DNA of 63,758 nt, filler included, from Bigelowiella natans CCMP2755 (lineage: Eukaryota; Protista; Cercozoa), in NCBI GenBank assembly GCA_000320545.1. It is 6 parts of 6 records of this genome, joined end to end, with 100 filler letters (N's around TTAATTAATTAA, not from the genome) between each part and the next. Parts side by side here need not be neighbours in the genome. Positions count along the whole stretch, not along the records: positions 29,299 to 52,254 come from ADNK01001263.1; 5 more parts are not named here. The stretch is one strand, 5' to 3'. A program made the position numbers and the translations under genes. Positions 1,446 to 51,267 of this stretch are shown here, piece after piece; position 1 is the stretch's first letter; the number at the start of each line of letters is the position of its first letter. The notes under the pieces were generated by a model. It was not told the DNA's origin. It did not search any database and worked only from the letters and a program-made list of their open reading frames with translations.

Positions 1446-2639
1446 TCACGTCCTAGATACTGGAGCTTTAGCAGAACTTTCATCAAAAAGCATTCCTACG
1501 CGACTTTTGGAGAGATTTTCCTCAGCTGGGGATTGGCTTTCATCAACAAGCATTCCAAAGATGGGACTCTCTAGTGCTGCACTAGTTTTGGAACGGTTCT
1601 TCTTCTGAACCTGGCTGTCAGACGCATAGCCAAACGTGGCTTCACGATGATTACATCCAGCGCCCCGCTTTCTTTTCTTATTTGCACTCTTCCTCCCTAG
1701 GTTGCATTTTGACTCTCGTCTATTTTTCCTTTTGATGTCTCCTATCGCTACCAGGATGGTGGAATCTCTTTCATTAAGGGCAACCTTTTTGTCACTAGCT
1801 TTTGAAGGTTTTGATTTCGACTTTGACTTCACGACTTTCTTCAAAGCTCGATTGCCCCTTGGTTTACTCTCGGATGTCAACAGGGCTGAATTCGGTTTTG
1901 TCGGTTTGTGCTCGGGAGTCAAAGCTTCACTTTTGAACATTCCTTCAACATGTTCTTTCTCGCTCCTGGCCAAGTGCTCTAACAATCTCCGCGGTGTACG
2001 AAATATGTACGCCATTCCTTTGTAATAGAGGTTCACTGCAAGTTTGTAAAGGCGTGCCTGCTTTCCCCTCCCGACTGGGTCGCCTCTTTGCGCAAGTTGT
2101 TTGAATCTATCGAAAGCTTTCTGAACAGTATCATCACTGCTCTCGAGCAAGTTACAAATTGCAGCCACGTCTCTCTCGGTCATGGAAATTAGATCTGGAG
2201 GCCATGACACGTGCTTCTTCCTTTCTGCTTTTCCTTTCTGGAGTATACCTTTAACAGCTCTCCTTGAGTTGTTGCAGACAACTACATCGTAGCTAACAAA
2301 TGGATCAGATGAAACAATCCATCTGCCCTTACCACTCATAACCTCCCATTGCATTTCCGAATTATGATTCTTGGCCGAGCACTCATAACCGCTTCTGCTC
2401 GATTTTCCACATTCGAGTGAATGGACAGCCCAGTGGGCCCTTTGGCATTGGCCGTTGCAGTAAGCAACTTCTTTGCATCCGCCACATGTCCAAAGATTTC
2501 CCATCTTGCCACAAAAGGCACACACTTCGGCGCCGATTCCTTCTCCTCTACTCTCCACCCGTGGTTCCCCTCCCCCCTCCTCCCCGCAAACCGCCTTCGA
2601 TTTGCGAACATCGCTCTTGATTGGACAAACATGATTCAT
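1446..2639 (-). CDS. MYND-type zinc finger protein, apparently intronless, with basic low-complexity C-terminus
   Basis: 397-aa ORF with CAFC..CGGC..YCNGQCQRAHWAVHSLEC, which fits the zf-MYND consensus. Confidence 0.8.
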   Translation of the reverse strand: MNHVCPIKSDVRKSKAVCGEEGGGEPRVESRGEGIGAEVCAFCGKMGNLWTCGGCKEVAYCNGQCQRAHWAVHSLECGKSSRSGYECSAKNHNSEMQWEVMSGKGRWIVSSDPFVSYDVVVCNNSRRAVKGILQKGKAERKKHVSWPPDLISMTERDVAAICNLLESSDDTVQKAFDRFKQLAQRGDPVGRGKQARLYKLAVNLYYKGMAYIFRTPRRLLEHLARSEKEHVEGMFKSEALTPEHKPTKPNSALLTSESKPRGNRALKKVVKSKSKSKPSKASDKKVALNERDSTILVAIGDIKRKNRRESKCNLGRKSANKKRKRGAGCNHREATFGYASDSQVQKKNRSKTSAALESPIFGMLVDESQSPAEENLSKSRVGMLFDESSAKAPVSRT

Positions 2640-3123
2640 TCTCTGCTTTTAGGTGCTAATCTAGCAGTGGGGAATGAAGGTCCTTTCGGTTTTGTCTTCT
2701 TCTCCTCCTCCGCTTTTGTTGGTGTATGCTCGTCACTCTGGTTCCTGGGTTCTAGCGATACTTTCAGGAATCTTCTCAGATCCCGTGTGTAGCATGCCAA
2801 TTATCACGAAAACACTATTTTATTTGATGTCGCACTGCGAAATCACACGGCGATGCTGCATCGGGAAAGGCTTCCTGCGCCATCGGGAGGAGGGGCCCTT
2901 CTCGCGTGCAGCGACAAGGACTTCGCGCACCCCAAGCCCGGTAGCGAAGGTTCTGGGAAAACTCGAGGTCCGAGGAGGTGAAAAGAAAAGCGAAGGGCGA
3001 ATTTCGGCTGTTCCTCTGCCAAATCGTTGTCGTCGTCGTCGAGTCAGTCGTCCGCTGACATCAAATTCCACTTGGCTGGTGGCCCGTGGCAGTTGTTCCA
3101 GCCACCCCCTTCCCAACGGACGC

Positions 3124-3693
3124 ATGCCTGGCAGGGCACTCCTCAGAACGGCAGTGTCTATGGCCATGGTAACGGTGTTGCTGCTGAAAGATGCCCTTTT
3201 TTTCTCGTGTGAGCTCTCTCTCCCTCCCTTTTCATCTAGTTGCTCTGGCTGGCTGCGGGTCGAACCCCCTCGACTGGGGTCGTTCCCAAATCCGTCTCGG
3301 GTCTTCGCTCACGTCTATTTCGAAGCTGTAATCGGAATGCACATATAGCTCGGGCTGCACAGTTCATTACATCCAGAAGGAATTCTGGAGACAGACGAGC
3401 CTTCTTAAGTGGGGGGGGAGACTTTGGTGGCGACCTCGTCGGATTAAAGACGACTGGTCGGAACGTGAATGTTGCAGCTGATATTGAACCTCAAGAACCT
3501 CCTGTAGAGAAGCACAAAGGTGTCAGAACCTTTTTGGAAGAAGGTATATACGCGTATATTTATACTTCCCTGTCTCACCTTAAAGGATTGCACACAGGAT
3601 GGACAATCCTCGTGGGGAAGAACGCCGAGGATAACGACCGCCTCAGCACGAAGATTGGCAATGTAGGAAATAGCTCCAGCGATAGTATATGTT

Positions 3694-32300: not shown

Positions 32301-34311
32301 ATGCTAGTTCTCTTCGAGGCCGCGGCAGGCTATGCGCTCTTTAAATTGAGCGACAAAGGCGCGCTCAAGAATGTTGACAACCTGAAAAAACAATTCGAGA
32401 CGCCTGAAGCTGCATCCAAGATGTAACTTAATAGCTAGCTGCCTCATCACCACTTTCGACATTAACTCCAATCACCTGCCTGCATCATCCCTCAAGTAAC
32501 ATTGTGTCGTAGAACTGAACGTTTTTTCGTCTGTCAGGGTGAAGTTGAAGGCCTTCAAGAAATTCAAGGACACGACGAAGGCTCTGAAAGCAGCTGCTGC
32601 CATCTGCGAGGGCAAGCTCGACAAGAACCTTGAGAAGTTTCTACAAAAGAAGGGACCGAAGGAGGGGAAGGGGAAGCTGGCTGTGATGGATAGCAAGCTG
32701 GGGAATCTTATTAAGAAGAAATTAGGAATCCAGTGCCTCTACAACGACTCGGTGATCGATCTGATGCGCGGGATCCGACAACAAATGGACAGTCTGCTGA
32801 ATCTCCCCGCAGCAGAGAAGATGGCGTTCCAGCTAGGTCTCTCGCACAGCCTCGCGCGGTTCAAGTTAAAGTTTAGCCCGGACAAGGTCGACACGATGAT
32901 CATCCAGGCGATAGGTACATGCACTAGAAGTAACAGTAGTGATAGTAATTGTACTCGTCGTAGCCACCGTCGTCCTTCAATATCGTCGTGGGGAGTCACG
33001 AGGGTTGTCAGAGTGCTAGCAAGCTCTAGCTGCCTACCGCTGCCACCTATTAGATTTCACCTTTCTGGTCCCCCCCCCTCTCTCTCTCTCTGCGTATTGC
33101 AACCATCCCTCCCCATTTACTCCATCTTCTCGGGGACACCTTTCATCGAAAATGAATACCCAACACCACCCTTCTCTCATATCCGTAATATCCCCATTAG
33201 CTCTCTCTCCCTCTCTCTCCCTCTCTCCTTCCTTCCATATAAAAACATATTTCAAAACTCATCGCCGTCCGCCCCCCCCCCCCCGTATTCTCCTTCAGCG
33301 CTCCTGGACGAGCTAGACAAGGAGCTGAACACGTACGCCATGCGCGTGCGGGAGTGGTACGGGTGGCACTTCCCGGAGATGGTGAAAGTCGTCACAGACA
33401 ACCTCATGTACGCGAAGTCGGTCAAGGCCATGGGCGTGCGCACCAACGCCAAGAACATCGACTTCTCCGACATCCTGCCCGAGGAGGTGGAGAAGGAGCT
33501 CAAGGAGACCGCCGAGATCTCCATGGGCACGGAGATCGCGGAGGAGGATATCATGAACATCCAGCAGCTGTGCATCCAGGTGATCAACCTGACGGAGTAC
33601 CGGGCGCAGCTCTTCGACTACCTGAAGAACCGCATGAACGCCATCGCACCGAACCTCTCCCACATGGTCGGGGAGCTCGTCGGCGCGCGGCTCATCGCGC
33701 ACGCAGGCAGCCTCATCAGCCTGGCCAAGTCGCCGGCCTCCACCGTGCAGATCCTCGGCGCGGAGAAGGCGCTCTTCCGCGCGCTCAAGACGAAGCACGA
33801 GACGCCCAAGTACGGTCTGATCTACCACGCGTCGCTCGTCGGCCAGGCCGCGCCCAAGCACAAAGGAAAGATCTCGCGTATGCTGGCAGCGAAGACCGCG
33901 CTGGCGACCAGAACGGACGCCCTCGGCGACGCGGAGGGGGTTACCGTGGGACTGGAAGGAAGGGAGAAGGTCGAGGAGAGGCTGAGGCAGCTTGAGGGGG
34001 GGCAGCTGCGGCAGATAAGCGGCACGGGAAAGTCGAACGTTACACAGAAGAAGTACGCGAAGCCGGAGACCGCGGGGCAGACGTACAACCCGGCGGCTGA
34101 CATGACCACCACAGCCGCGAAGAAAAGGCCGCGCGACGAGGAGGACGAGAAGGAGGCGGCGACGAAGAAGAAGAAGGCGAAGAAGGAGAAGGGGGAGAAG
34201 AAGAAGAAGGTGAAGAAGGAGAACGGCGAGAAGAAAAAGAAGAAGAAGAAAAAGGACAAGGACGGAGATGAGAAACCCAAGAAGAAAAAGAAAGCTAAGA
34301 AAGAGAAGTAA
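32301..34311 (+). CDS. NOP58: Nucleolar protein 58 (box C/D snoRNP), 3 coding exons
   Basis: MLVLFEAAAGYALFK, LKFSPDKVDTMIIQAI, LDKELNTYAMRVREWYGWHFPE, ALKTKHETPKYGLIYHAS, KKE/D tail; introns about 32423-32538 and 32915-33298. Confidence 0.95.
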
Positions 34312-35029: not shown

Positions 35030-37381
35030 CTAAGGAGCAGTCTTAGTTCCTGCACCAGCAACGTCGGCCATCGATTTGATTTTGAGGTCTGATCCTTGAG
35101 TGATGCTGAGCTCAGCAAGGTCAACATCTCCACAGCATGTCTGTACAAGGAGCCGAGTCACAATGTATGGGCAGCAATTGGCTGCTGGTCTACGATCTTC
35201 AAAGTAGCCGCAGCCTTTCTTGTGAGTTTCAGTGGGAATCCGAATGCTTGAGCCGCGATCTGCGATTCCAAAGCTAAACTGCTCCATTGACGCAGTTTCA
35301 TGTTTCCCCGTCAGCCTAATCATGGATATTAGTGTTGGGTATGTGCTTGCTTGATGCAACACGTATCAGCTGCGAAGGATACTCAGTGTTACCTCTCTTC
35401 ATTTCCCTCTCCATAGGCTGAGATGTGCTTTTTGTGCGTCATCTCCAATTTGATAAGCATCTTCTTTATTATCTGAATAATTGAAAAGAAATTCGTATTT
35501 TTATGTCAATCGGATATGAAAGTTCAGAGGAGGATGGGGATTGGAGATTGATTATTTTGCTACTGACTTCCGCTCCGCTGTCTTTCGATCGCGTTCCCTT
35601 CGTTGAGAAGTTCGCATGACACCCAGCACCGTTCCAATCTCCTTTCATTGGCTTCGGAGCGAAGCTGATATTGATGTTGTAGAATTCGGAGCATCGATAC
35701 AACAAGTATCTAATACGTAAAACAACGAACATATGCATCATCATGCAAGGTTGTCCGATCTCCGTGGCAAAGGATGTAAGCAGGGGGAGTCTTTTCAAAC
35801 CTTGCAAACCACAAATCATCTCCCATCCGGATACCTTCGCACGGGCCTACCTGTACAAGGGGGATGATAATAAATGGAAGGAAGAAGAATCATATTCCTC
35901 TCTTCACACCTTTGCATCTAAAGAGAGCAAAGCGGGTAAGACAAATAGTAGAAGACAGATAGAGTGAGGAGAATAGAGAGACCTGGAACTCCCATTGTGA
36001 CGGCATAACCTCGGCATTTATGCCTGAGATCTTGACCCCAGCGTACAAGCAGCAACGAAGATGCGCCTCTGCAAGCTCCCGGCCTTTAGCATTTCCAGTA
36101 CCGACCTAGTTTATCACTCTGATTAGATATTGGTTACGTCGTATGTACAGCTTGTATCACACTAATATTAGAGAAGTACCCCGCAGTAATATTGTCCCTG
36201 AGATTGAGCAAATCCAGTCTTTGGGAAACCCAGAGGTTTCGTCTGGTAAGGTTTATCGTGGAACATGGTGTATTCTTGCTCAAGACCGAACCAGGGCTCA
36301 TGAGTCTAGTAGAAGTAGAAGTAGTAGTAGTAGTAGTAGTAGCATCGTCACATAAATGATTAATTGCTTTCATGTGCATGGGGATTAATGATTAAATTGG
36401 CAATGAAGAGATATACTTTGAATTTTTCCATCGCTTCCATACAGGCTGCTCTGTGGTTTGTAGGCAGTGGGATTCCCAGAGAGTCATATGCATCACAAAG
36501 GACAATGACATTATCTCCTTTCCTGAAAGGGTCTCTATAGATACGACGAGGTCGAATCATTACCTATTCAAAATGAGTATGAATGATATGTTACATCTGC
36601 GTCTGGTTTCAGCTGCTAGCGCTAACTGCAAAACTAATCGATTATTCTTTGGCGTGTTACTCAGAAATGTTTGCATGACATGAAGCTGAACTCGAAAATC
36701 ACCACCTCAGAATTATTTCCTGGGGCTTGGCCGGTGCTGGATCCATCGTAGTTCCATTCTGGGAGCTTTTTAACATCTTCGGTTCCTGGCTTTACCTTGA
36801 AATCCAGCGTGCGAGATTTGGATCTGTACCCCCCCGAAATGATGATATCTTCATTTTGACAAAATATTGATGATAGTGAATATATGTTTACCGAAGATCC
36901 CAGAGAGATCCTCCTAGCCAGATATACTCTGCAATTATCTACATAGAAGAAAGAGGCCTAGAGTGTCACTTTAGCATGGCGTAGGACATATACAAATGAC
37001 GAACCTTTCCATTAAGCTCTTGAGGAGCAATCATTACGTTTCCCATGGCCTTTTTTTTCTTCTGAAACGATTAGAGGGGAAATTACCACGAATATCACGA
37101 ATCAGAAACGATCAGGATAAGCGATCGTTGTAAAACCTACGTCTTGAACGTATTTCTGTCCTGGTGGAACATAAGCTTCCCCATTTTTGCTGGGCGAATC
37201 TCCATTCTCACGAGGAGGAGCACGGCTTACGGACTTGCTGCCCGAGTTCGTTGTGGAATTGCAAGCTCCCTATTGTCATTTAGTATCAATTTATTGTATC
37301 TTTCGAATAAGTTTTTCCGAGGACATTCTGTGCTGTCCTAACTAGCGAAAGGGATGGGAGGGGGGGGGAGCCTCGTACCAT
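35030..37381 (-). CDS. GLN1: Glutamine synthetase type II, copy 1 (leader M|GACNSTT.., long C-tail)
   Basis: [94 protein letters not shown]; ATG-only first exon at 37379-37381. Confidence 0.93.
35131..37146. repeat. Left arm of ~2 kb inverted repeat (GS core including introns)
   Basis: Near-identical reverse complement of 44118-46161. Confidence 0.95.
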
Positions 37382-42869: not shown

Positions 42870-43701
42870 CTAGAAGATGTGGCAAGAACTGGAGAACACG
42901 AAGCAGTTTCTTGATGACAAGCTGCATGGAAGGTCACACCAACATTCAAGTCTGTGAGTAGATCTAGAGAATTTCAGCCCTCATCCACAGCTCCAGAGCG
43001 GTTGGTGTCACTTGTGTGACTCAAAGAAAATTGATCTCCTTGGAAAACTCGCTTCTCTCTTGTGAGGCCACTTGGATCCAGAGGTCTTCAGGTGCTGGTT
43101 TTGAACGAAAGTCCGGTCGTCTACCCTCTCTCAATCATCCTTCGGAGAAAAATCAGGTGGGCACAGGAATCAATCTGCACACAGCAAACATCGTCCAGCT
43201 CGTGTTGTCAAAAAAACAAACACACTCGGAAACACGCAAAATTGTCCCCATTCCTCCATCGAGAGAAAAGGAGAAGAAGAAGAAGAAGAGGGAGAAGAAG
43301 AAGAAGAGGGAGAAGGAGGAGGAGGAGGAGGAGGAGGAGGAGGAGGAGGAGGAGGAGGAGACGGGAGAGCCACAACACGTGTGTCCTGAGTGAACGAACG
43401 AGTGGGCAGCATTGTGAAGCGGTTCCTGAGAACGACAAGAACCAGATCAGCATGCAGCTGAGAGGATCATGAGTCACGCCAACTCATCCGTGACTTCTCC
43501 CATGAACAAGACCTCCATGAAAAGTTAAGGGTTCGTTTCACATCCGCCGGCCACAGCACATGGAAGATGGACGGATGTGACCTGGCAGGCGCAAGAGAGC
43601 GCGAGGACAATCAGAACAGCGGCGCGCGCTTCCGATGCTCCAAAAAAATGCCCACAAAACCACGAGGTTCGTCTCCTGAAACACTCGTCATTCCATGGCA
43701 T
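42870..43701 (-). pseudogene. Probable decayed gene remnant within the TpA-depleted patch
   Basis: First-exon-like ORF MPWNDECFRRRTSWFCGHFFGASEARAAVLIVLALSCACQ|gt, then short coding-like segments broken by stops; no family recognised. Confidence 0.3.
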
Positions 43702-44048
43702 TTCAGAATAGCGACAAAGATTTTTAGCGAAAATTCAAAATTTGCCGCCGTTCTGTGTCACATGGTCACATGCACAGCTTCCTTCGCCGGATCGCTAGCT
43801 TTTCCCATCAATAAGCTTAGGGCATTTTCCCCGTACGACAACCTTCTGAAGGGCACACATCGCTAAAATCGTCGAGCAGTTTTCGCTTTTCGGACGGAGC
43901 TGTTCCAAGCTGTTCATGTTCCGGCTCATATTTCAGTTCCCCCCAATGATTCTCACCGTCGCCGACTGTTAGGGGAGGTCTGCCCAGGGAAGCAGTTTTG
44001 GAAAACTCAGCGTGTTTCTAGTTTTTACGGGCACGTGGTCACTCTAGC

Positions 44049-46190
44049 ATGGGCTGCGGGACTTCAAAACCAAGCGTGCGCGCTCCTGGGAATGAAAATG
44101 GAAAGCGGACATGCATGCAAGACGTACGTTTTACTGTGATCGCTTGCTCTGATCGTTTTTGCTTCGTGATATTCGTGGTAATTTCCCCTCTAATCGTTTC
44201 AGAAGAAAAAAAAGGCCATGGGAAATGTAATGATTGCTCCTGAAGAGCTTAATGGAAAGGTTCGTCATTTGTATATGTCCTACGCCATGCTAAAGTGACA
44301 CTCTACGCCGCCGCCGCCGCCGCCGCCGCCTCCTCCTCCTTCTCCTCCTCCAATACAGATTATTGCAGAGTATATCTGGCTAGGAGGATCTCTCTGGGAT
44401 CTTCGGTAAACGTATATTCACTATCATCAATATTTTGTCAAAATGAAGATATCATCATTTCGGGGGGGTACAGATCCAAATCTCGCACGCTGGATTTCAA
44501 GGTAAAGCCAGGAACCGAAGATGTTAAAAAGCTCCCAGAATGGAACTACGATGGATCCAGCACCGGCCAAGCCCCAGGAAATAATTCTGAGGTGGTGATT
44601 TTCGAGCCATGCAAATATTTCTGAGTAACACGCCAAAGAATAATCGATTAGTTTTGCAGTTAGCGCTAGCAGCTGAAACCAGACGCAGATGTAACATATC
44701 ATTCATACTCATTTTGAATAGGTAATGATTCGACCTCGTCGTATCTATAGAGACCCTTTCAGGAAAGGAGATAATGTCATTGTCCTTTGTGATGCATATG
44801 ACTCTCTGGGAATCCCACTGCCTACAAACCACAGAGCAGCCTGTATGGAAGCGATGGAAAAATTCAAAGTATATCTCTTCATTGCCAATTTAATCATTAA
44901 TCCCCATGCACATGAAAGCAATTAATCATTTATGTGACGATGCTACTACAACTACTACTACTACTACTACTAGACTCATGAGCCCTGGTTCGGTCTTGAG
45001 CAAGAATACACCATGTTCCACGATAAACCTTACCAGACGAAACCTCTGGGTTTCCCAAAGACTGGATTTGCTCAATCTCAGGGACAATATTACTGCGGGG
45101 TACTTCTCGATATATTTCTATTAGTGTGGTGATACAAGCTGTACATACGACGTAACCAATATCTAATCAGAGTGATAAACTAGGTCGGTACTGGAAATGC
45201 TAAAGGCCGGGAGCTTGCAGAGGCGCATCTTCGTTGCTGCTTGTACGCTGGGGTCAAGATCTCAGGCATAAATGCCGAGGTTATGCCGTCACAATGGGAG
45301 TTCCAGGTCTCTCTATTCTCCTCACTCTATCTGTCTTCTACTATTTGTCTTTACCCGCTTTGCTCTCTTTAGATGCAAAGGTGTGAAGAGAGGAATATGA
45401 TTCTTCTTCCTTCCATTTATCATCATCCCCCTTGTACAGATAGGCCCGTGCGAAGGTATCCGGATGGGAGATGATTTGTGGTTTGCAAGGTTTGAAAAGA
45501 CTCCCCCTGCTTACATCCTTTGCCACGGAGATCGGACAACCTTGCATGATGATGCATATGTTCGTTGTTTTACGTATTAGATACTTGTTGTATCGATGCT
45601 CCGAGTTCTACAACATCAATATCAGCTTCGCTCCGAAGCCAATGAAAGGAGATTGGAACGGTGCTGGGTGTCATGCGAACTTCTCAACGAAGGGAACGCG
45701 ATCGAAGGACAGCGGAGCGGAAGTCAGTAGCAAAACAATCAATCTCCAATCCTCATCCTAACCTCTGAACTTTCATATCCGATTGACATAAAAATACGAA
45801 TTTCTTTTCAATTATTCAGACAATAAAGAAGATGCTTATCAAATTGGAGATGACGCACAAAAAGCACATCTCAGCCTATGGAGAGGGAAATGAAGAGAGG
45901 TAACACTAAGTATCCTTCGCAGCTGATACGTGTTGCATCAAGCAAGCACATACCCAACACTAATATCCATGATTAGGCTGACTGGGAAACATGAAACTGC
46001 GTCAATGGAGCAGTTTAGCTTTGGAATCGCAGATCGCGGCTCAAGCATTCGGATTCCCACTGAAACTCACAAGAAAGGGTGCGGCTACTTTGAAGATCGT
46101 AGACCAGCAGCCAATTGCTGCCCATACATTGTGACTCGGCTCCTTGTAGAGACATGCTGTGCGGACGCAGACAGCGTTTCTGCAAAATGA
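44049..46190 (+). CDS. GLN1: Glutamine synthetase type II, copy 2 (leader MGCGTSK.., short C-tail)
   Basis: [25 protein letters not shown]|[19 protein letters not shown]|[10 protein letters not shown].. then the same GSII motifs as copy 1; ends [14 protein letters not shown]. Confidence 0.93.
44118..46161. repeat. Right arm of ~2 kb inverted repeat
   Basis: Near-identical reverse complement of 35131-37146. Confidence 0.95.
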
Positions 46191-46485
46191 CACATTTGAG
46201 CTCATCAACAGACCATGTGCAAAGTGTGTATGGAATGAACATGCCTTTCGCCATGATCACCGCGCTGGGTGACGAATTGGGAGCGCCATCGAGCATGATG
46301 AACGTGCACATTTTGCACATGGAAGAATAACATCTTTACGTACATGCCAGCGTGATTGCCACTCATGGCCGCACGCCTGCATGCAGCATGCACAGCAATA
46401 TGTCGATCGTCGATCGAGTCACATCACGCTGCACTTCTCGTCCGCTCCACTACTGCGCGTCAGTTGGATCGTGCCCTTTCGAAAT

Positions 46486-46724: not shown

Positions 46725-46768
<44 letters not shown>

Positions 46769-47647
46769 CGCACACACACACGCACACGCACACGCACACA
46801 CATATACACATACATTGCTCCAGTTTCAATCCCCCCCCCCCCCCTCCCTTCCAACTCACCGGTCCTAAGCTGTGTCGGAGGTCTTGAATGCATTCCTCCA
46901 GGTCCTCCTCAAGGCGCCTGAATCTATGCGTATCTTCGCAATAATCGTTGAACTTGTGTACCATCTCATAGGTGCCCCTGACCATGTCCTCGAGGTGCAG
47001 GAGCGCGTTTTCCTTGGAACGACGAAAATGCGAGAGGGCGAGCAGCCACGAATCGCGGGAGGCACCATCGGCAGCTAGCAAGGTGTAGCTCTCAACCTTT
47101 CTCAGGGCGTTGGGCAAGGACGACGGGGGAAAAGGCAGAGAGGAAGAAATCGATATCATGTACGTGTTCGATAACAGGAAACAACTGCCCAAACGTCCAC
47201 GGTGACATAACCCATTTGAAGTATGCAAAAATGAGATGTCTGCTACGCAATCAAGCTGCCCCCCTCTTCGCTGAGTTTCACCTCTCTTGATCTTCTCCCC
47301 CCCCCTCCTCCCCCTCCCCCCCCTCCCGCCTTTGACTATTTCCTCACATCCAAAGAAACTGTTCGCAGCACCTTATTTGTCAGCGGCGATTTGCCACGAA
47401 TTGAGAAACCCCTCCTCGCCTCATCTTCGTCTCCATCGCTGAGAGGGGTGGATCTTGCGTCTATGAGCTCGATGGCAAGGGCCACCTCGCTCTCCTCGTC
47501 ACGTGAGGAGGTAGGGGAAGAGGAGGAGGAGATGGAACTCCTGCTGCTACTGGTGGTGGTGGTGGTGGAAGACGAGGCAGCAGCTAGATATGATTGGAAT
47601 TGGGTAGAGATAGGGGGGGGGGGAGGGGTGGGAGCTTGTCACCAGTT

Positions 47648-47678
<31 letters not shown>

Positions 47679-49252
47679 AAGTGTGTGTTTGTGTGTTTAT
47701 GTGTTTATGTGTGTGCAATTGTCACACCTAGAGATGATTTCTGCTCTCCCTCGTCGTCGGCCCCACTGCGACTCATGATCAAGACAAAGCGTTCCTCCCA
47801 TCCTCCTCCGGCCGCACGCGCCTTCTCCTTTTCATCCCTTTCGGCCCTGCTGCAGATCCCATCCTTCCCGTCAACACTCCCAATTACATCCTCCTTTTGT
47901 TTCTCCATCGTCATCATACCCATCCTCGTTTTCCTACTACTCTGTTTCTTCTTCTTCCTTTTCTTCCTCTTCACATCGTCATTGTACGAGGCCATTTCGA
48001 TACGACACTGCATCGTCTGGAGCCCCTCTCCAAGATCGCTGCTGCTCCTCCGCCTCACTGCCCGGTGCTTCTCCTTCCTCTTTGTCCTCTTCGTCGAATC
48101 TCCCTTCCCTCTCCTCCTCCCCCTTTCGTCAAGAAGGGTAAGTTTGCCGTGCATGAGCCACTTCGCGTTGTGCAGGGGCTGAGAGTAAAGGGCGGCGATG
48201 ATCTCCGGATTTTCCCGCCAGAACACCTCGTAGAGAATGCTCTGGATCCTCCTCATCGGCACTTTGCTGAACACCTGTAACACCGCGGGGGAAGAGTATG
48301 GAGAAAGGCATCATGGACGACAAGTACACACATGGAAGAAGAAACAGATTTTCAAAGCATTGGGATTTCGCGGCGAGATGCGTACGATTAATACACAATG
48401 AAGGGAACCCCACCTCTTCGTTCGCTTCAATGACTTTCCTAATTATCTCCTCATAGTTGGCGAAGACCCCCCTCCCTATACGCAGCAAGATCTCATCCTC
48501 GAGACTTTCGAGGATGGGTAGCCGCTGCAAGCCCCCAATCCCTTCCGGCGCTGCCTTTGCCCTCGAGATCACAGCGGAGACAGTCTTGTACTCCTGGTCA
48601 TCCAGCAAATAATGTGGTGACGACGACAACAATGATGATGGCGATGATGATGTATCTGCTGCTATCTCGCCGTCCCTTCGAGTCTGGACGAAGTGGTCGC
48701 GTATCATCTGTTCTGCCCTTACGACGAAGTCATGGCGGATGTTGTTGAGGGTGCATAAGAAGCGGAACTCGGAGCCAAAACCCCCTTGCTCGAGTAACGC
48801 CTTTAGTGTCTGGGATGATGATTGCATCTTGCCGATGAATAGCCGGCAGAATGCAATATCCTTCTGCTGCTGCGGATTTTCGGGGAGGGCTGCTCGCTCT
48901 ACACGAGTGGACGAGGCGATTACTTTTGAATCCCCTTCCTTGTCTTTCGTTTCCGGGCTGATGGGAGAGGAGGCGGTAGTGACATTACCCCCGCTGTCGA
49001 TCCTGCCCAACTCTTTTCTGGTCGAACTTGGGGAGAGAAATCCTGCGAAGTAGAGGAGGGCGCTGGCGATCTGCCCGACATATTTTAAGAGAAGAAATTC
49101 GGTTGGTTTGAATGCGTAACGACACACACACACACACACACATACACACACACATACACATACACACATACAAACACGTTTTTAACACATCGAGAGGCAG
49201 ATTTAGAGGACCATACCATAACAAGGACGGTGGCCAATGCAACAAAGATCAT
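46486..49252 (-). CDS. Hypothetical protein: N-terminal TM, RGS-like helical region and insert-split PH domain; multi-exon
   Basis: MIFVALATVLVM|IASALLYFAGFL; LKALLEQGGFGSEFRFLC..AEQMIRDHFV..EILLRIGRGVFANY; LMHGKLTLL..WEERFVLI..YTLLAADGASRDSWLLALSH. Confidence 0.55.
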
Positions 49253-49586: not shown

Positions 49587-51267
49587 ATGCCGAAGGTCTT
49601 TTGTCTCGGAAAGTTCGCAGCACCTTCCGAGACGGGGGCGGCTGGCACAGGCAAATTCTGGGCACATACCACGGGGCAAGGGCGTTGTCGTAGGATCGAA
49701 ACACCACAGCGATGCCACGTCCGGAGAGTCGTTTGTTTCTTCAGAGCACTCCTCTGCTCAAGACTCACCGCAGCACTTCTCGAAGTCGCCCCCACTCATG
49801 ATTTCTGTTCCACACTGGCCACGCTCGCTGGGCGCCACATATGACGCCAGGAAATTCCCGTCTTTGAAGAAGGGATATGTTAGGCGGCTAGTGAAGAGGC
49901 TTCGGAACGCCGAGGAGGCGGAGAAGGAAAGCGAAGCCAAGGAGGCCACAGCCGACTTTCCAACACGCGCGTTCAGGCGCACCATCTACGGTTATTATGT
50001 GGAAGGACGTGTCTGCGGGTTCTCACCAGCGAGCAGGGACAATAACCACAAATATTTCGTCCACATGAGATATCCGAGGGAGAGAAAGGCTACGATCGGG
50101 TGTCGGTATGTTGCTGGAGAAGCACACGACAGCGACGACGAAGAACAAGTTATGGAAATGGGCGTGACAATGCCCTGCCTCCCGATACACGGCGGAAAAT
50201 ATGGCGGCCTACAGCTAGGGGGGAACATGGGCGACAACAATGATAAGCACAGTAGGAATGATCAGGGAGGTGAGAAGGGGAAGGGGGGAGCGGAGAAGAG
50301 AGGCCAAAGCCTTGACGATGGAAAGATGGAACGGCGGAAACAATTACCTGCTATGAAAGCAAATGGGATCTCTCCAGCTAACGAAGAGGATGGCAAAGAC
50401 GATGTTAAGGAAGAGTGCTGCAGCAGCAGTAGCAGTAGCAGTGGAGTTACTAACAGCGCTTCGACGTCTCCGCACTCTCCTCCCAAGGAATATTACTTAC
50501 TAAATCCGAAGAGATCAAGCCTACGTGAAGGTGCAACAGTTCTGTGCGCATTCCGACGTATGCGCGCCTCCCCATTCGCACGCAGCGTAGAACAGAGATC
50601 ATTTGAACATTTCTGGATTCGAGGGGAGGTGACTGCCTTCAACGGGACATTCTTCCGAGTGCGGTATGACGATGACGTTTCATTCATTGACACGGAGGAG
50701 GGCGACGACCCGTTAGCGACCTCCCCGGTTGAGTACATGGTATCTGCGTGCTTGGAGAACGTAACCCCGAGAAAGTACTCGAGCAGCACCCTGCCCTTCG
50801 TCCCTGCTGATGTTGACCTGTCGGAGGAACACCCCACGCTGCCAGGCGCCCTCCCCGTTGTAGTGGTTGTCGATGGGGGTGGCGGGGGGGACAAGAACAA
50901 AGGCAATGCTGGGTTAACGCCGAAGGAGCGTTGGCCGCGCAACTGGCTCGATGCGAAGTTTCACTTCGGAGAGGCTGTTTGGGCGCGCTGGAACGGAAAC
51001 TTATTCTACAGAGGTACAGTGCATGCGATGAATGCCAACGGAACTTATCACATCATGTTTGACGATGGAGACGAGCAAGCGGAGACGCCGCCATGTTGGA
51101 TGTTGCGCAACAGACCACCGCCACACCGCACGGAGCTAGGGCTAGACGCACTAGATGCGCGACAACGAGCCCAGGCTGAAAGAGAAGACGACAATGTCCA
51201 TGGCAGAGATCCTCCGGTTTACACAGACGTAAACCCCATAGCTGATGCTGAAGACGAGCAGCAATGA
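49587..51267 (+). CDS. Tudor/Agenet-like domain protein
   Basis: 489-aa ORF 49798-51267 with FHFGEAVWARWNGNLFYRGTVHAMNANGTYHIMFDDGD and an earlier degenerate copy (WIRGEVTAFNGTFFRVRYDDD); start uncertain. Confidence 0.65.

What the first reader, a model, noticed from the sequence alone, without database searches (positions are those of the whole stretch)
44049..44260. GS copy 2 has a different dual-acylation leader MGCGTSK: a membrane-anchored GS system
Seen: [25 protein letters not shown]|KKKK (Gly2, Cys3, Ser6, Lys7, then a polybasic patch). Two leaders with no alignable DNA and different exon structure both keep MG-C-S6, which argues for selection rather than chance. Inference: lipid-anchored GS that fixes ammonium at a membrane or flagellum, perhaps next to AMT transporters. 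I do not know of this being described for GSII.
Basis: partly seen in the sequence, partly recalled or inferred. Interest (0 to 1): 0.8.

Follow-up and report, generated by a model that had tools for sequence, protein, structure and literature searches.

The report
Lipid-anchor leader on algal glutamine synthetase
Two neighbouring glutamine synthetase genes of the alga Bigelowiella natans have an unannotated, transcribed first exon that adds a classic fatty-acid anchoring signal (Met-Gly-Cys...), so part of this normally soluble nitrogen-assimilating enzyme is probably tethered to a membrane.

Summary
At 44049-44123 an exon encodes [28 protein letters not shown] contigs from two studies splice it (GT..AG, phase 0) to exon 2 ([10 protein letters not shown]...) of an 11-exon type II glutamine synthetase (GSII).

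The organism is Bigelowiella natans. Both JGI gene models (92485 is this gene; 53980 is the paralogue on the minus strand) start at the internal ATG, so the leaders are unannotated.

They are diverged homologues (SK..RAP..ENG) lying just outside a 2.06-kb homogenised block shared by the inverted gene pair.

The paralogue's leader is conserved in a related species' transcript: 43 codons, no indel, only the GS frame open, dN/dS 0.20. A third, more distant genomic contig has an in-frame first exon starting MGAC...SVSRGP. Gly2, Cys3/4 and a small residue at position 6 are kept in all four. Neither the other chlorarachniophyte-type GSII nor any of 134 GSII proteins examined has such a motif.

Best reading (about 0.55): a translated N-myristoylation/S-palmitoylation plus polybasic signal anchors GSII decamers to a membrane, possibly alongside a shorter cytosolic form. 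Acylation and localisation are inferred, not shown. I rate it a new variant of known kinds, of moderate interest.

The parts
43884..44048 (+). 5' UTR of GS copy 2. It contains an out-of-frame 18-codon uORF (ATG 43916, weak context) and an in-frame stop at 44019.
   Evidence: The RNA contig of run X1 begins at 43884 and that of X5 at 43903.
44049..44123 (+). Exon 1 coding part: the 25-residue leader starting MGCGTSK (Gly2, Cys3, Ser6, Lys7). The start context is agcATGG.
   Evidence: Transcribed in runs X1 and X5. It is the only ATG of 993 in the piece with the consensus plus Cys.
44124..44202 (+). Intron 1 (79 nt, GT..AG, phase 0). Its 3' part is identical to the paralogue's intron.
   Evidence: Joint 44123>44203 in the X1 contig. 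blastn block.
44203..44259 (+). Exon 2: a polybasic KKKK patch, then the internal in-frame ATG at 44218 (gccATGG). That ATG is the start of JGI model Bigna1 92485.
44359..46190 (+). Exons 3-11 of GSII copy 2, with introns. The C-terminal tail reads ...[13 protein letters not shown], then the stop codon.
   Evidence: Gene model. PDB GSII matches. Splice joints in RNA. Aligns to P0273.
37141..37269 (-). Leader exon of the paralogue (GS copy 1): 43 codons starting GACNSTT..., in frame with its exon 2. In-frame stops lie directly upstream of the acceptor site.
   Evidence: Its last 115 nt sit at the 5' end of the main GS contig of run X5. Conserved against L001 with dN/dS 0.20.
37379..37381 (-). 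Putative start codon of copy 1 (gccATG), followed directly by a GTACGA...AG intron (37378-37270). This is inferred.
   Evidence: The related transcript L001 begins TG|GGAGCT, where an unspliced RNA would read AG. The B. natans contigs L026 and L027 instead keep 32 nt of this intron.
35030..37061 (-). Exons 2-11 of GS copy 1 (JGI Bigna1 53980 starts at 37046), with a longer C-terminal tail.
44118..46161 (.). Homogenised block shared with 37146-35131 on the opposite strand: 2062 aligned positions, 35 mismatches, 8 gaps. Both the leaders and the C-terminal tails lie just outside it.
   Evidence: blastn. Paralogue-specific letters seen in RNA at 44226, 46079 and 46149, and the alternative tail after 46161.

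Best explanation
Exon 1 of this Bigelowiella natans GSII gene is coding. Translation starts at 44049 and gives a GSII with a 30-residue, hydrophilic N-terminal extension whose first residues (Met-Gly-Cys-Gly-Thr-Ser-Lys) form an SH4-type dual-acylation signal. Inferred steps: the initiator Met is removed and Gly2 is N-myristoylated co-translationally by N-myristoyltransferase. Transient membrane contact then lets a DHHC acyltransferase palmitoylate Cys3. The Lys26-29 patch adds electrostatic binding. Because GSII is a decamer of two pentameric rings, with its N-terminal domains on the outer faces, up to five anchors per face would hold the cylinder flat on a membrane. There it would trap NH3/NH4+ as it crosses. 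The paralogue 6.7 kb away carries a diverged homologue of the same leader (MGAC...), so the anchor is an inherited, selected feature of this GSII lineage. A shorter cytosolic form from the internal ATG at 44218 (alternative transcript start or leaky scanning) may coexist. Shown: the exon, its transcription and splicing, the open frame, and conservation of the motif. Inferred: translation from 44049, both acylations, and membrane location.
For: (1) RNA contigs from two studies include exon 1 and join 44123>44203 at GT..AG. (2) In such an mRNA, 44049 is the first ATG in a strong context (A at -3, G at +4). Seven ATGs would have to be passed to reach the annotated start at 44218. (3) The motif meets the N-myristoylation consensus with an adjacent Cys. 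It is the only ATG of 993 in the piece that does. (4) The paralogue's leader is coding: against the related species' transcript L001 it shows 43 codons with no indel, only the GS frame open, differences by codon position of 5/5/13, dN/dS 0.20 and Fisher p 0.002. In contrast the 3' UTRs are unalignable and intron 9 carries large indels. (5) A third taxon (L030, genomic, 81% identical GSII over three exons) has an in-frame GT..AG-bounded first exon starting MGACHT... with SVSRGP. Gly2, the Cys, an Arg and a Pro are invariant in the four-leader alignment. (6) The leader has no hydrophobic core (maximum Kyte-Doolittle value over 9 residues below 1.2), so it is not a signal peptide. (7) An NMT sequence from B. 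natans was included in an NMT phylogeny. (8) In yeast Gln1, N-terminal-domain residues (R23, T49, P83) lie in the back-to-back interface of decamers, that is on the outer ring faces (PMC4011332).
Against: No protein-level evidence exists: no N-terminal peptide, no acylation assay, no localisation. No orthologue of the copy-2 leader itself was found. Its support rests on homology to the copy-1 / L001 / L030 leaders. Both JGI models start at the internal ATG, which has a perfect gccATGG context and corresponds to the start of leaderless GSII in other chlorarachniophyte-type sequences, which begin MDYQSLDQGGK. An 18-codon uORF precedes 44049. One RNA contig (X4) starts inside the intron before exon 2, and MMETSP contigs L026/L027 keep intron sequence upstream of the copy-1 leader, so leaderless or unspliced transcripts exist. 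Logan contigs are mosaics of the two near-identical paralogues, so isoform proportions cannot be read from them. Copy 2 looks like the minor paralogue, at about 7-40% of reads at diagnostic sites.
Confidence: 0.55

Rival explanations
1. Exon 1 is only 5' UTR. The protein starts at the internal ATG at 44218 as in JGI model 92485, GS is soluble and cytosolic, and the MGC reading frame is a by-product.
For: Both JGI models start at the internal ATG. Its context gccATGG is optimal. Related chlorarachniophyte-type GSII start at the equivalent place, with an in-frame stop upstream in the mRNA. A uORF lies in the 5' UTR.
Against: Seven upstream ATGs, two of them in strong context, would have to be skipped. 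The homologous leader of copy 1 evolves as coding sequence (dN/dS 0.20, only one open frame, no indels) while true non-coding parts are unalignable. The MG(A)C start recurs in a third taxon. The chance rate of the motif is about 1 in 1000 ATGs.
Confidence: 0.15
2. The leader is translated but is not a stable membrane anchor. It could be a regulatory or disordered tail (phosphorylation, turnover, partner binding), or it could be myristoylated only, giving weak and reversible association.
For: The leaders are Ser/Thr-rich, hydrophilic and fast-evolving apart from a few positions. dN/dS is four times that of the core. The conserved SVSR(A/G)P core is not needed for acylation and hints at a second function.
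Against: The invariant positions are exactly those required for dual acylation (Gly2 and the Cys next to it), with a small residue at position 6 in all four leaders, followed by basic residues.
Confidence: 0.15
3. The extension is an organelle-targeting presequence (mitochondrial, or part of a plastid route) rather than a lipidation signal.
For: Hopkins et al. 2012 (PMC3542566) report that none of the five B. natans GS genes has a bipartite plastid leader. They nevertheless recovered a GS without targeting signals in a plastid-enriched proteome. The L030 leader is Arg-rich.
Against: There is no hydrophobic signal-peptide core, which chlorarachniophyte plastid import requires. Acidic residues are scattered through the leaders. 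What is conserved is Gly2/Cys, not an amphipathic pattern.
Confidence: 0.05

Closest known systems
SH4-type dual-acylation signals (Src-family kinases such as Lck/Yes/Lyn, G-alpha i/o, trypanosome calflagins, plant CBL/CPK proteins). The examples are from my own knowledge, not tested here.
   Same: Met-Gly-Cys start, a small residue at position 6, Lys at position 7 and a following basic patch. The expected mechanism is the same: co-translational myristoylation, then palmitoylation, then membrane trapping.
   Different: Here the cargo is a decameric core metabolic enzyme rather than a signalling protein, so up to ten anchors per particle. Modification has not been demonstrated.
Canonical cytosolic GSII, including JGI models Bigna1 92485 and 53980 and the chlorarachniophyte-type GSII P0154-P0158 (Amorphochlora amoebiformis is P0155).
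   Same: Same enzyme family and domain pair (PF03951 plus PF00120). 70-75% identity. The internal Met aligns with their start.
   Different: Those proteins start MDYQSLDQGGK, about 11 residues before the conserved AEY[IV]W motif, with an in-frame stop or plain UTR upstream. The Bigelowiella genes and L030 have an extra upstream coding exon with the MG(A)C motif.
Mammalian glutamine synthetase (GLUL) self-palmitoylation and transfer to RHOJ (Eelen et al. 2018, as summarised in PMC12541607).
   Same: A GSII that carries palmitate and acts at membranes.
   Different: In the summary read here, the enzyme palmitoylates itself and passes the palmitoyl group to RHOJ. No N-terminal myristoylation leader is described, and the function described is not ammonium assimilation at a membrane.
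Docking of soybean cytosolic GS on the symbiosome-membrane channel nodulin 26 (Masalkar et al. 2010, as cited in PMC4266029).
   Same: The functional logic is the same: GS is held at a membrane next to an NH3 conduit to make a strong sink.
   Different: Recruitment there is by protein-protein binding to a channel tail, not by a covalent lipid anchor encoded in the GS gene.

Membership tests
Glutamine synthetase type II (GSII) | Gln-synt_N (PF03951) plus Gln-synt_C (PF00120) domains. Eukaryote-type length of about 350-390 residues. Similarity to solved GSII decamers. | tested here: met
   The last exon matches GSII chains 4bax, 3fky and 2d3a at E 1e-19 to 1e-22. The database proteins that the window encodes (P0273, P0152) carry both Pfam domains. 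The gene model has 392 codons.
N-myristoyltransferase substrates | Gly at position 2. An uncharged, non-bulky residue at 3. Ser/Thr/Ala/Gly/Cys/Asn at 6. No Pro at 7 (PROSITE PS00008-type rule). | tested here: met
   MGCGTSK fits. The paralogue (MGACNST), L001 (GACNSTE) and L030 (MGACHTH) also fit. The internal start MGNVMIA fails at position 6.
N-myristoyltransferase substrates | Myristate actually attached to Gly2 of the mature protein. | not testable with these tools
   This needs metabolic labelling or mass spectrometry. The only related fact found is that a B. natans NMT sequence was used in a published NMT phylogeny.
SH4-type dual acylation (myristoyl plus palmitoyl) | A Cys within a few residues of the myristoylated Gly, often followed by basic residues. 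| tested here: met
   Cys3 in copy 2. Cys4 in copy 1, L001 and L030. This column is invariant in the alignment. KKKK follows at residues 26-29.
Chlorarachniophyte plastid/periplastid bipartite leaders | An N-terminal hydrophobic signal peptide followed by a transit peptide. | tested here: not met
   The maximum 9-residue Kyte-Doolittle hydropathy is -0.2 in exon 1 and 1.2 in exon 2. Hopkins et al. also found no such leader on any B. natans GS.

The most novel reading that the evidence does not exclude
Bigelowiella and its close relatives have turned cytosolic GSII into a lipid-anchored enzyme. It would sit on the cytosolic face of a specific membrane, either the outermost plastid envelope or the plasma membrane next to ammonium channels. 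This would make up for the absence of any plastid-targeted GS in this alga, by trapping the ammonium that leaves the four-membrane plastid after nitrite reduction. It would be a covalently tethered ammonium-assimilation metabolon, and could explain why a GS without targeting signals turned up in the plastid-enriched proteome.
Probability: 0.15. Interest if true: 0.7.

Novelty: new variant of a known kind. Interest (0 to 1): 0.5.

Why it matters
GSII is treated as a soluble cytosolic or organellar enzyme. A genetically encoded lipid anchor on it would show that primary ammonium assimilation can be placed at a membrane by covalent tethering rather than by protein docking. In B. natans it bears on an open point: nitrite reductase is plastid-targeted, yet none of the five GS genes has a plastid leader (PMC3542566). 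That leaves unclear where plastid-derived ammonium is captured. Practically, both reference gene models (Bigna1 92485 and 53980) appear to be truncated at the N-terminus. Localisation predictions made from them therefore miss the signal. The finding also gives a simple, testable construct: leader-GFP with Gly2 and Cys changes.

Tried and rejected
- Pfam on single exons was mostly blank because the exons are short. GSII identity was taken from the PDB search and from database proteins instead.
- The search for homologous proteins restricted to the leader region of the L001 product found nothing. The collection holds no full-length protein with either leader.
- The one metagenome scan, with the exon 2-3 peptide, returned only distant GSII: plastid GS2 types, virus-like AT-rich genes and MDALK... 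types. None has an MG-Cys start.
- The protein atlas gave only generic GS clusters.
- The representatives search with the last exon gave mostly fragments. It was useful only because P0001 led to the MMETSP contigs.
- No orthologue of the copy-2 leader itself could be retrieved.
- Supplementary tables of Hopkins et al. are not held, so which GS they detected is unknown.
- DNA for Amorphochlora P0155 was withheld.
- Isoform ratios from Logan contigs were rejected as unreliable, because the contigs are mosaics of the two paralogues.
- I considered and rejected a signal peptide and independent origin of the two leaders.
Exons were searched by reference, and natural cDNA contigs and database proteins were used instead. 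Inside scripts, exons were concatenated only briefly, to count stops and list ATGs. Nothing joined was saved or searched.

Full report
**1. What is at the coordinates**

The stretch 44049-44260 holds an ATG-initiated exon, an intron and a second exon.
- Exon 1 (44049-44123, 25 codons) reads [25 protein letters not shown].
- Intron 1 (44124-44202) is 79 nt, GTACGT...TTTCAG, phase 0.
- Exon 2 (44203-44259) reads [19 protein letters not shown].

Nine more exons follow, to a stop at 46188-46190. All ten introns are GT..AG (68-133 nt). The model has 392 codons with no internal stop.

The last exon matches the C-termini of solved type II glutamine synthetases from Streptomyces, yeast, maize, Drosophila and mammals at E 1e-17 to 1e-22.

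**2. Organism and annotation**

A search with a related natural cDNA product found JGI model Bigna1 53980 at 92% identity (P0152). Its 90% cluster also holds Bigna1 92485 (P0273).
- P0273 ends ...[11 protein letters not shown] and aligns to 44218-46187, so it is this gene.
- P0152 aligns to 37046-35033 on the minus strand, 100% identical in the last exon. It is the paralogue.

The window is therefore Bigelowiella natans, a chlorarachniophyte in Rhizaria. Both reference models start at the internal Met (MGNVMIAP...), so the leader exons are not part of the annotated proteins.

**3. Transcription and splicing**

Twenty runs from seven studies hold about 0.3-0.38 of the sampled words of 43800-46400, which is roughly the exon share. 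Laying four runs gave the following.
- Run X1 has a 1560-nt contig that starts at 43884, runs through exon 1 and joins 44123 to 44203 (GT..AG). It has the copy-2 letter T at 44226.
- Run X5 has a separate contig 43903-44123 that continues with the first 11 letters of exon 2.
- The other predicted junctions are seen in three runs.

The contigs are mosaics of two near-identical genes. Paralogue letters appear at 44226, 46079 and 46149, and a different tail follows 46161. The main X5 contig carries 115 nt of another leader before exon 2.

In the raw-read run X21, 10-16 of 37 reads at the diagnostic 3' sites are copy-2 type. In X4 the copy-2-specific exon 9-10 junction has depth 36 against 505. 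Copy 2 is expressed but is the minor paralogue.

**4. The paralogue and the duplication**

Copy 1 lies head-to-head, 6.7 kb away on the minus strand. blastn shows one block, 44118-46161 against 37146-35131, with 2062 positions, 35 mismatches and 8 gaps.
- The block starts six bases before the exon 1/intron 1 border.
- It ends 29 bases before the copy-2 stop.
- Introns are as similar as exons, which is the signature of gene conversion between inverted repeats.
- The leaders and the C-terminal tails lie just outside the block and are strongly diverged.

Copy 1's leader exon (37269-37141) reads [12 protein letters not shown]..., 43 codons in frame with its exon 2. In-frame TGA and TAG lie just upstream of its acceptor site. 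A start must therefore come from an upstream exon. The sequence gccATG|GTACGA at 37381-37379 fits, giving MGACNS.

**5. Are the two leaders independent?**

No. They share [13 protein letters not shown] / [13 protein letters not shown] (8 of 13 identical; 70 of 5000 shuffles reach that score) and the final Gln-Asp. They are old homologues.

**6. Evidence that the leader is coding**

*A related species.* MMETSP contig L001 is a polyadenylated transcript with intron 9 retained. It begins TG followed by GGAGCTTGC..., and reads GACNSTETSLSK... through [10 protein letters not shown] into GSII. I compared it with the B. natans transcript L026.
- The 43 leader codons have 23 differences, split 5/5/13 by codon position.
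- There are no indels, and only the GS frame is open.
- For the leader, dS is 0.58, dN is 0.115 and omega is 0.20 (Fisher p 0.002). The core has omega 0.05.
- The 3' UTRs of the same transcripts cannot be aligned, and intron 9 has a 23-nt indel.

The leader is therefore held as protein-coding sequence. The initial TG, where an unspliced RNA must read AG, fits splicing from ...ATG. This rests on two terminal bases only.

*A third taxon.* Contig L030 (Logan, run ERR15116648) is genomic, and its GSII is 81% identical to B. natans over three exons, against 70-77% to other chlorarachniophyte-type GSII. It has the following structure.
- An ATG at 154 is the first ATG after an in-frame stop.
- It opens MGACHTHDRESM...SVSRGP... 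for 33 codons, up to a GTACGC donor.
- An 18-codon exon follows (...DLGDLGEK), then [10 protein letters not shown].
- All three exons are phase 0 with GT..AG borders.

In the four-leader alignment Gly2, the Cys, an Arg and a Pro are invariant. Residue 6 of each protein is Ser or Thr.

*Scanning logic.* In the exon-1-containing mRNA, two weak-context ATGs form a short out-of-frame uORF. 44049 is the first ATG with A at -3 and G at +4. Seven ATGs precede the annotated start at 44218.

*Chance.* One of 993 ATGs in the piece has the consensus plus a Cys at position 3-5. It is this one.

**7. Distribution**

The leader is not a general GSII feature.
- The nearest other sequences (P0154-P0158, including Amorphochlora amoebiformis) start MDYQSLDQGGK. 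One has an in-frame stop upstream in its transcript (L028). Another has a plain 57-nt UTR, and its intronless genomic copy has stops upstream.
- None of 24 marine GSII loci from the metagenome scan has the motif.

One caveat applies: predicted proteins can miss upstream exons, as the JGI models did here.

**8. Mechanism proposed**

MGCGTSK is a textbook SH4-type signal; that comparison comes from my own knowledge. The leader is hydrophilic and has no signal-peptide core.

The likely sequence of events is N-myristoylation of Gly2, palmitoylation of Cys3 and help from Lys26-29. A B. natans NMT sequence is used in a published phylogeny.

GSII is a decamer of two face-to-face pentamers. In yeast Gln1, N-terminal-domain residues R23, T49 and P83 lie in the back-to-back contact between decamers, that is on the outer faces (PMC4011332). 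Five flexible 30-50-residue leaders per face could therefore pin the cylinder to a bilayer. All of this is inference.

A short soluble form may be made as well.
- The internal ATG has the context gccATGG.
- One contig (X4) begins 40 nt inside the intron before exon 2.
- The MMETSP contigs L026 and L027 keep 32 nt of the putative start-codon intron of copy 1.

**9. Literature**

Full-text searches combined glutamine synthetase with myristoylation/palmitoylation terms, and Bigelowiella with glutamine synthetase or myristoyl. They found no description of an N-acylated GSII. The nearest concepts are these.
- Mammalian GS self-palmitoylation with transfer to RHOJ (PMC12541607 citing Eelen 2018).
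- Soybean GS docking on nodulin 26 at the symbiosome membrane (PMC4266029).
- For B. natans, Hopkins et al. (PMC3542566) note five GS genes, none with a bipartite plastid leader, and a GS without targeting signals in a plastid-enriched proteome. That fits membrane association but fits contamination equally well.

**10. Verdict**

It is a new variant of known kinds (a known enzyme plus a known lipidation signal), restricted to Bigelowiella and close relatives, and missing from the reference annotation.

Exons were used by reference, and natural cDNA contigs and database proteins stood in for the full-length product.

Noticed in passing
window 35030-37381 (-) and 44049-46190 (+): The two GSII genes form a head-to-head inverted pair with a 2.06-kb homogenised block covering exons and introns alike. 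Strain contigs (L026/L027) and the JGI models show different mosaics of the diagnostic letters: Ile or Val at the first codon of exon 8, and Glu or Gln in exon 2. This suggests ongoing gene conversion.
   Followed up: partly
window 46150-46190 (+) versus 35030-35150 (-): The C-terminal tails differ. Copy 2 ends ...[13 protein letters not shown]. Copy 1 continues for about 30 more residues (...[21 protein letters not shown]...). A Cys-Cys pair precedes both tails, and L001 has the long type.
   Followed up: no
window 37715 to about 39160 (+): An intron-rich protein kinase gene (Pkinase hits on two exons; N-terminus MSLEAQEG...) starts only about 330 nt from the putative start codon of GS copy 1 on the other strand. 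This is a likely bidirectional promoter.
   Followed up: partly
window 43916-43972 (+): An 18-codon out-of-frame uORF (two weak-context ATGs) lies in the 5' UTR of GS copy 2. It could modulate use of the 44049 start against the 44218 start.
   Followed up: partly
window 32539-34311 (+): A Nop56/58-type snoRNP gene (Nop domain, E 8e-86) with a long Lys/Glu-rich tail. The long open frame reads through at least one intron.
   Followed up: partly
window 49798-51267 (+): A 489-codon open frame with weak Tudor/Agenet-type matches near residues 264-306 and 391-426.
   Followed up: no
window 43270-43360, 44310-44350, 44950-44975, 46740-46800, 47560-47700: Microsatellites in intergenic DNA and in GS introns: (GAG/GAA)n, (GCC)n in intron 2, (ACT)n in intron 5, and (CA)n. 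The read tool skipped two of them as repeats.
   Followed up: no
L026 and L027, positions 1-32: Both MMETSP isoforms begin with 32 nt of the sequence I take as the start-codon intron of copy 1. Either this intron is poorly spliced or some transcripts start inside it. L026 also retains intron 8, and L001 retains intron 9.
   Followed up: partly
L031 (ENA metagenome scaffold), 2501-3556: An intronless, leaderless GSII (P0157, starting MDYQSL...) sits in a very gene-dense eukaryote-like scaffold next to presenilin and succinate dehydrogenase genes. The organism is unknown.
   Followed up: no
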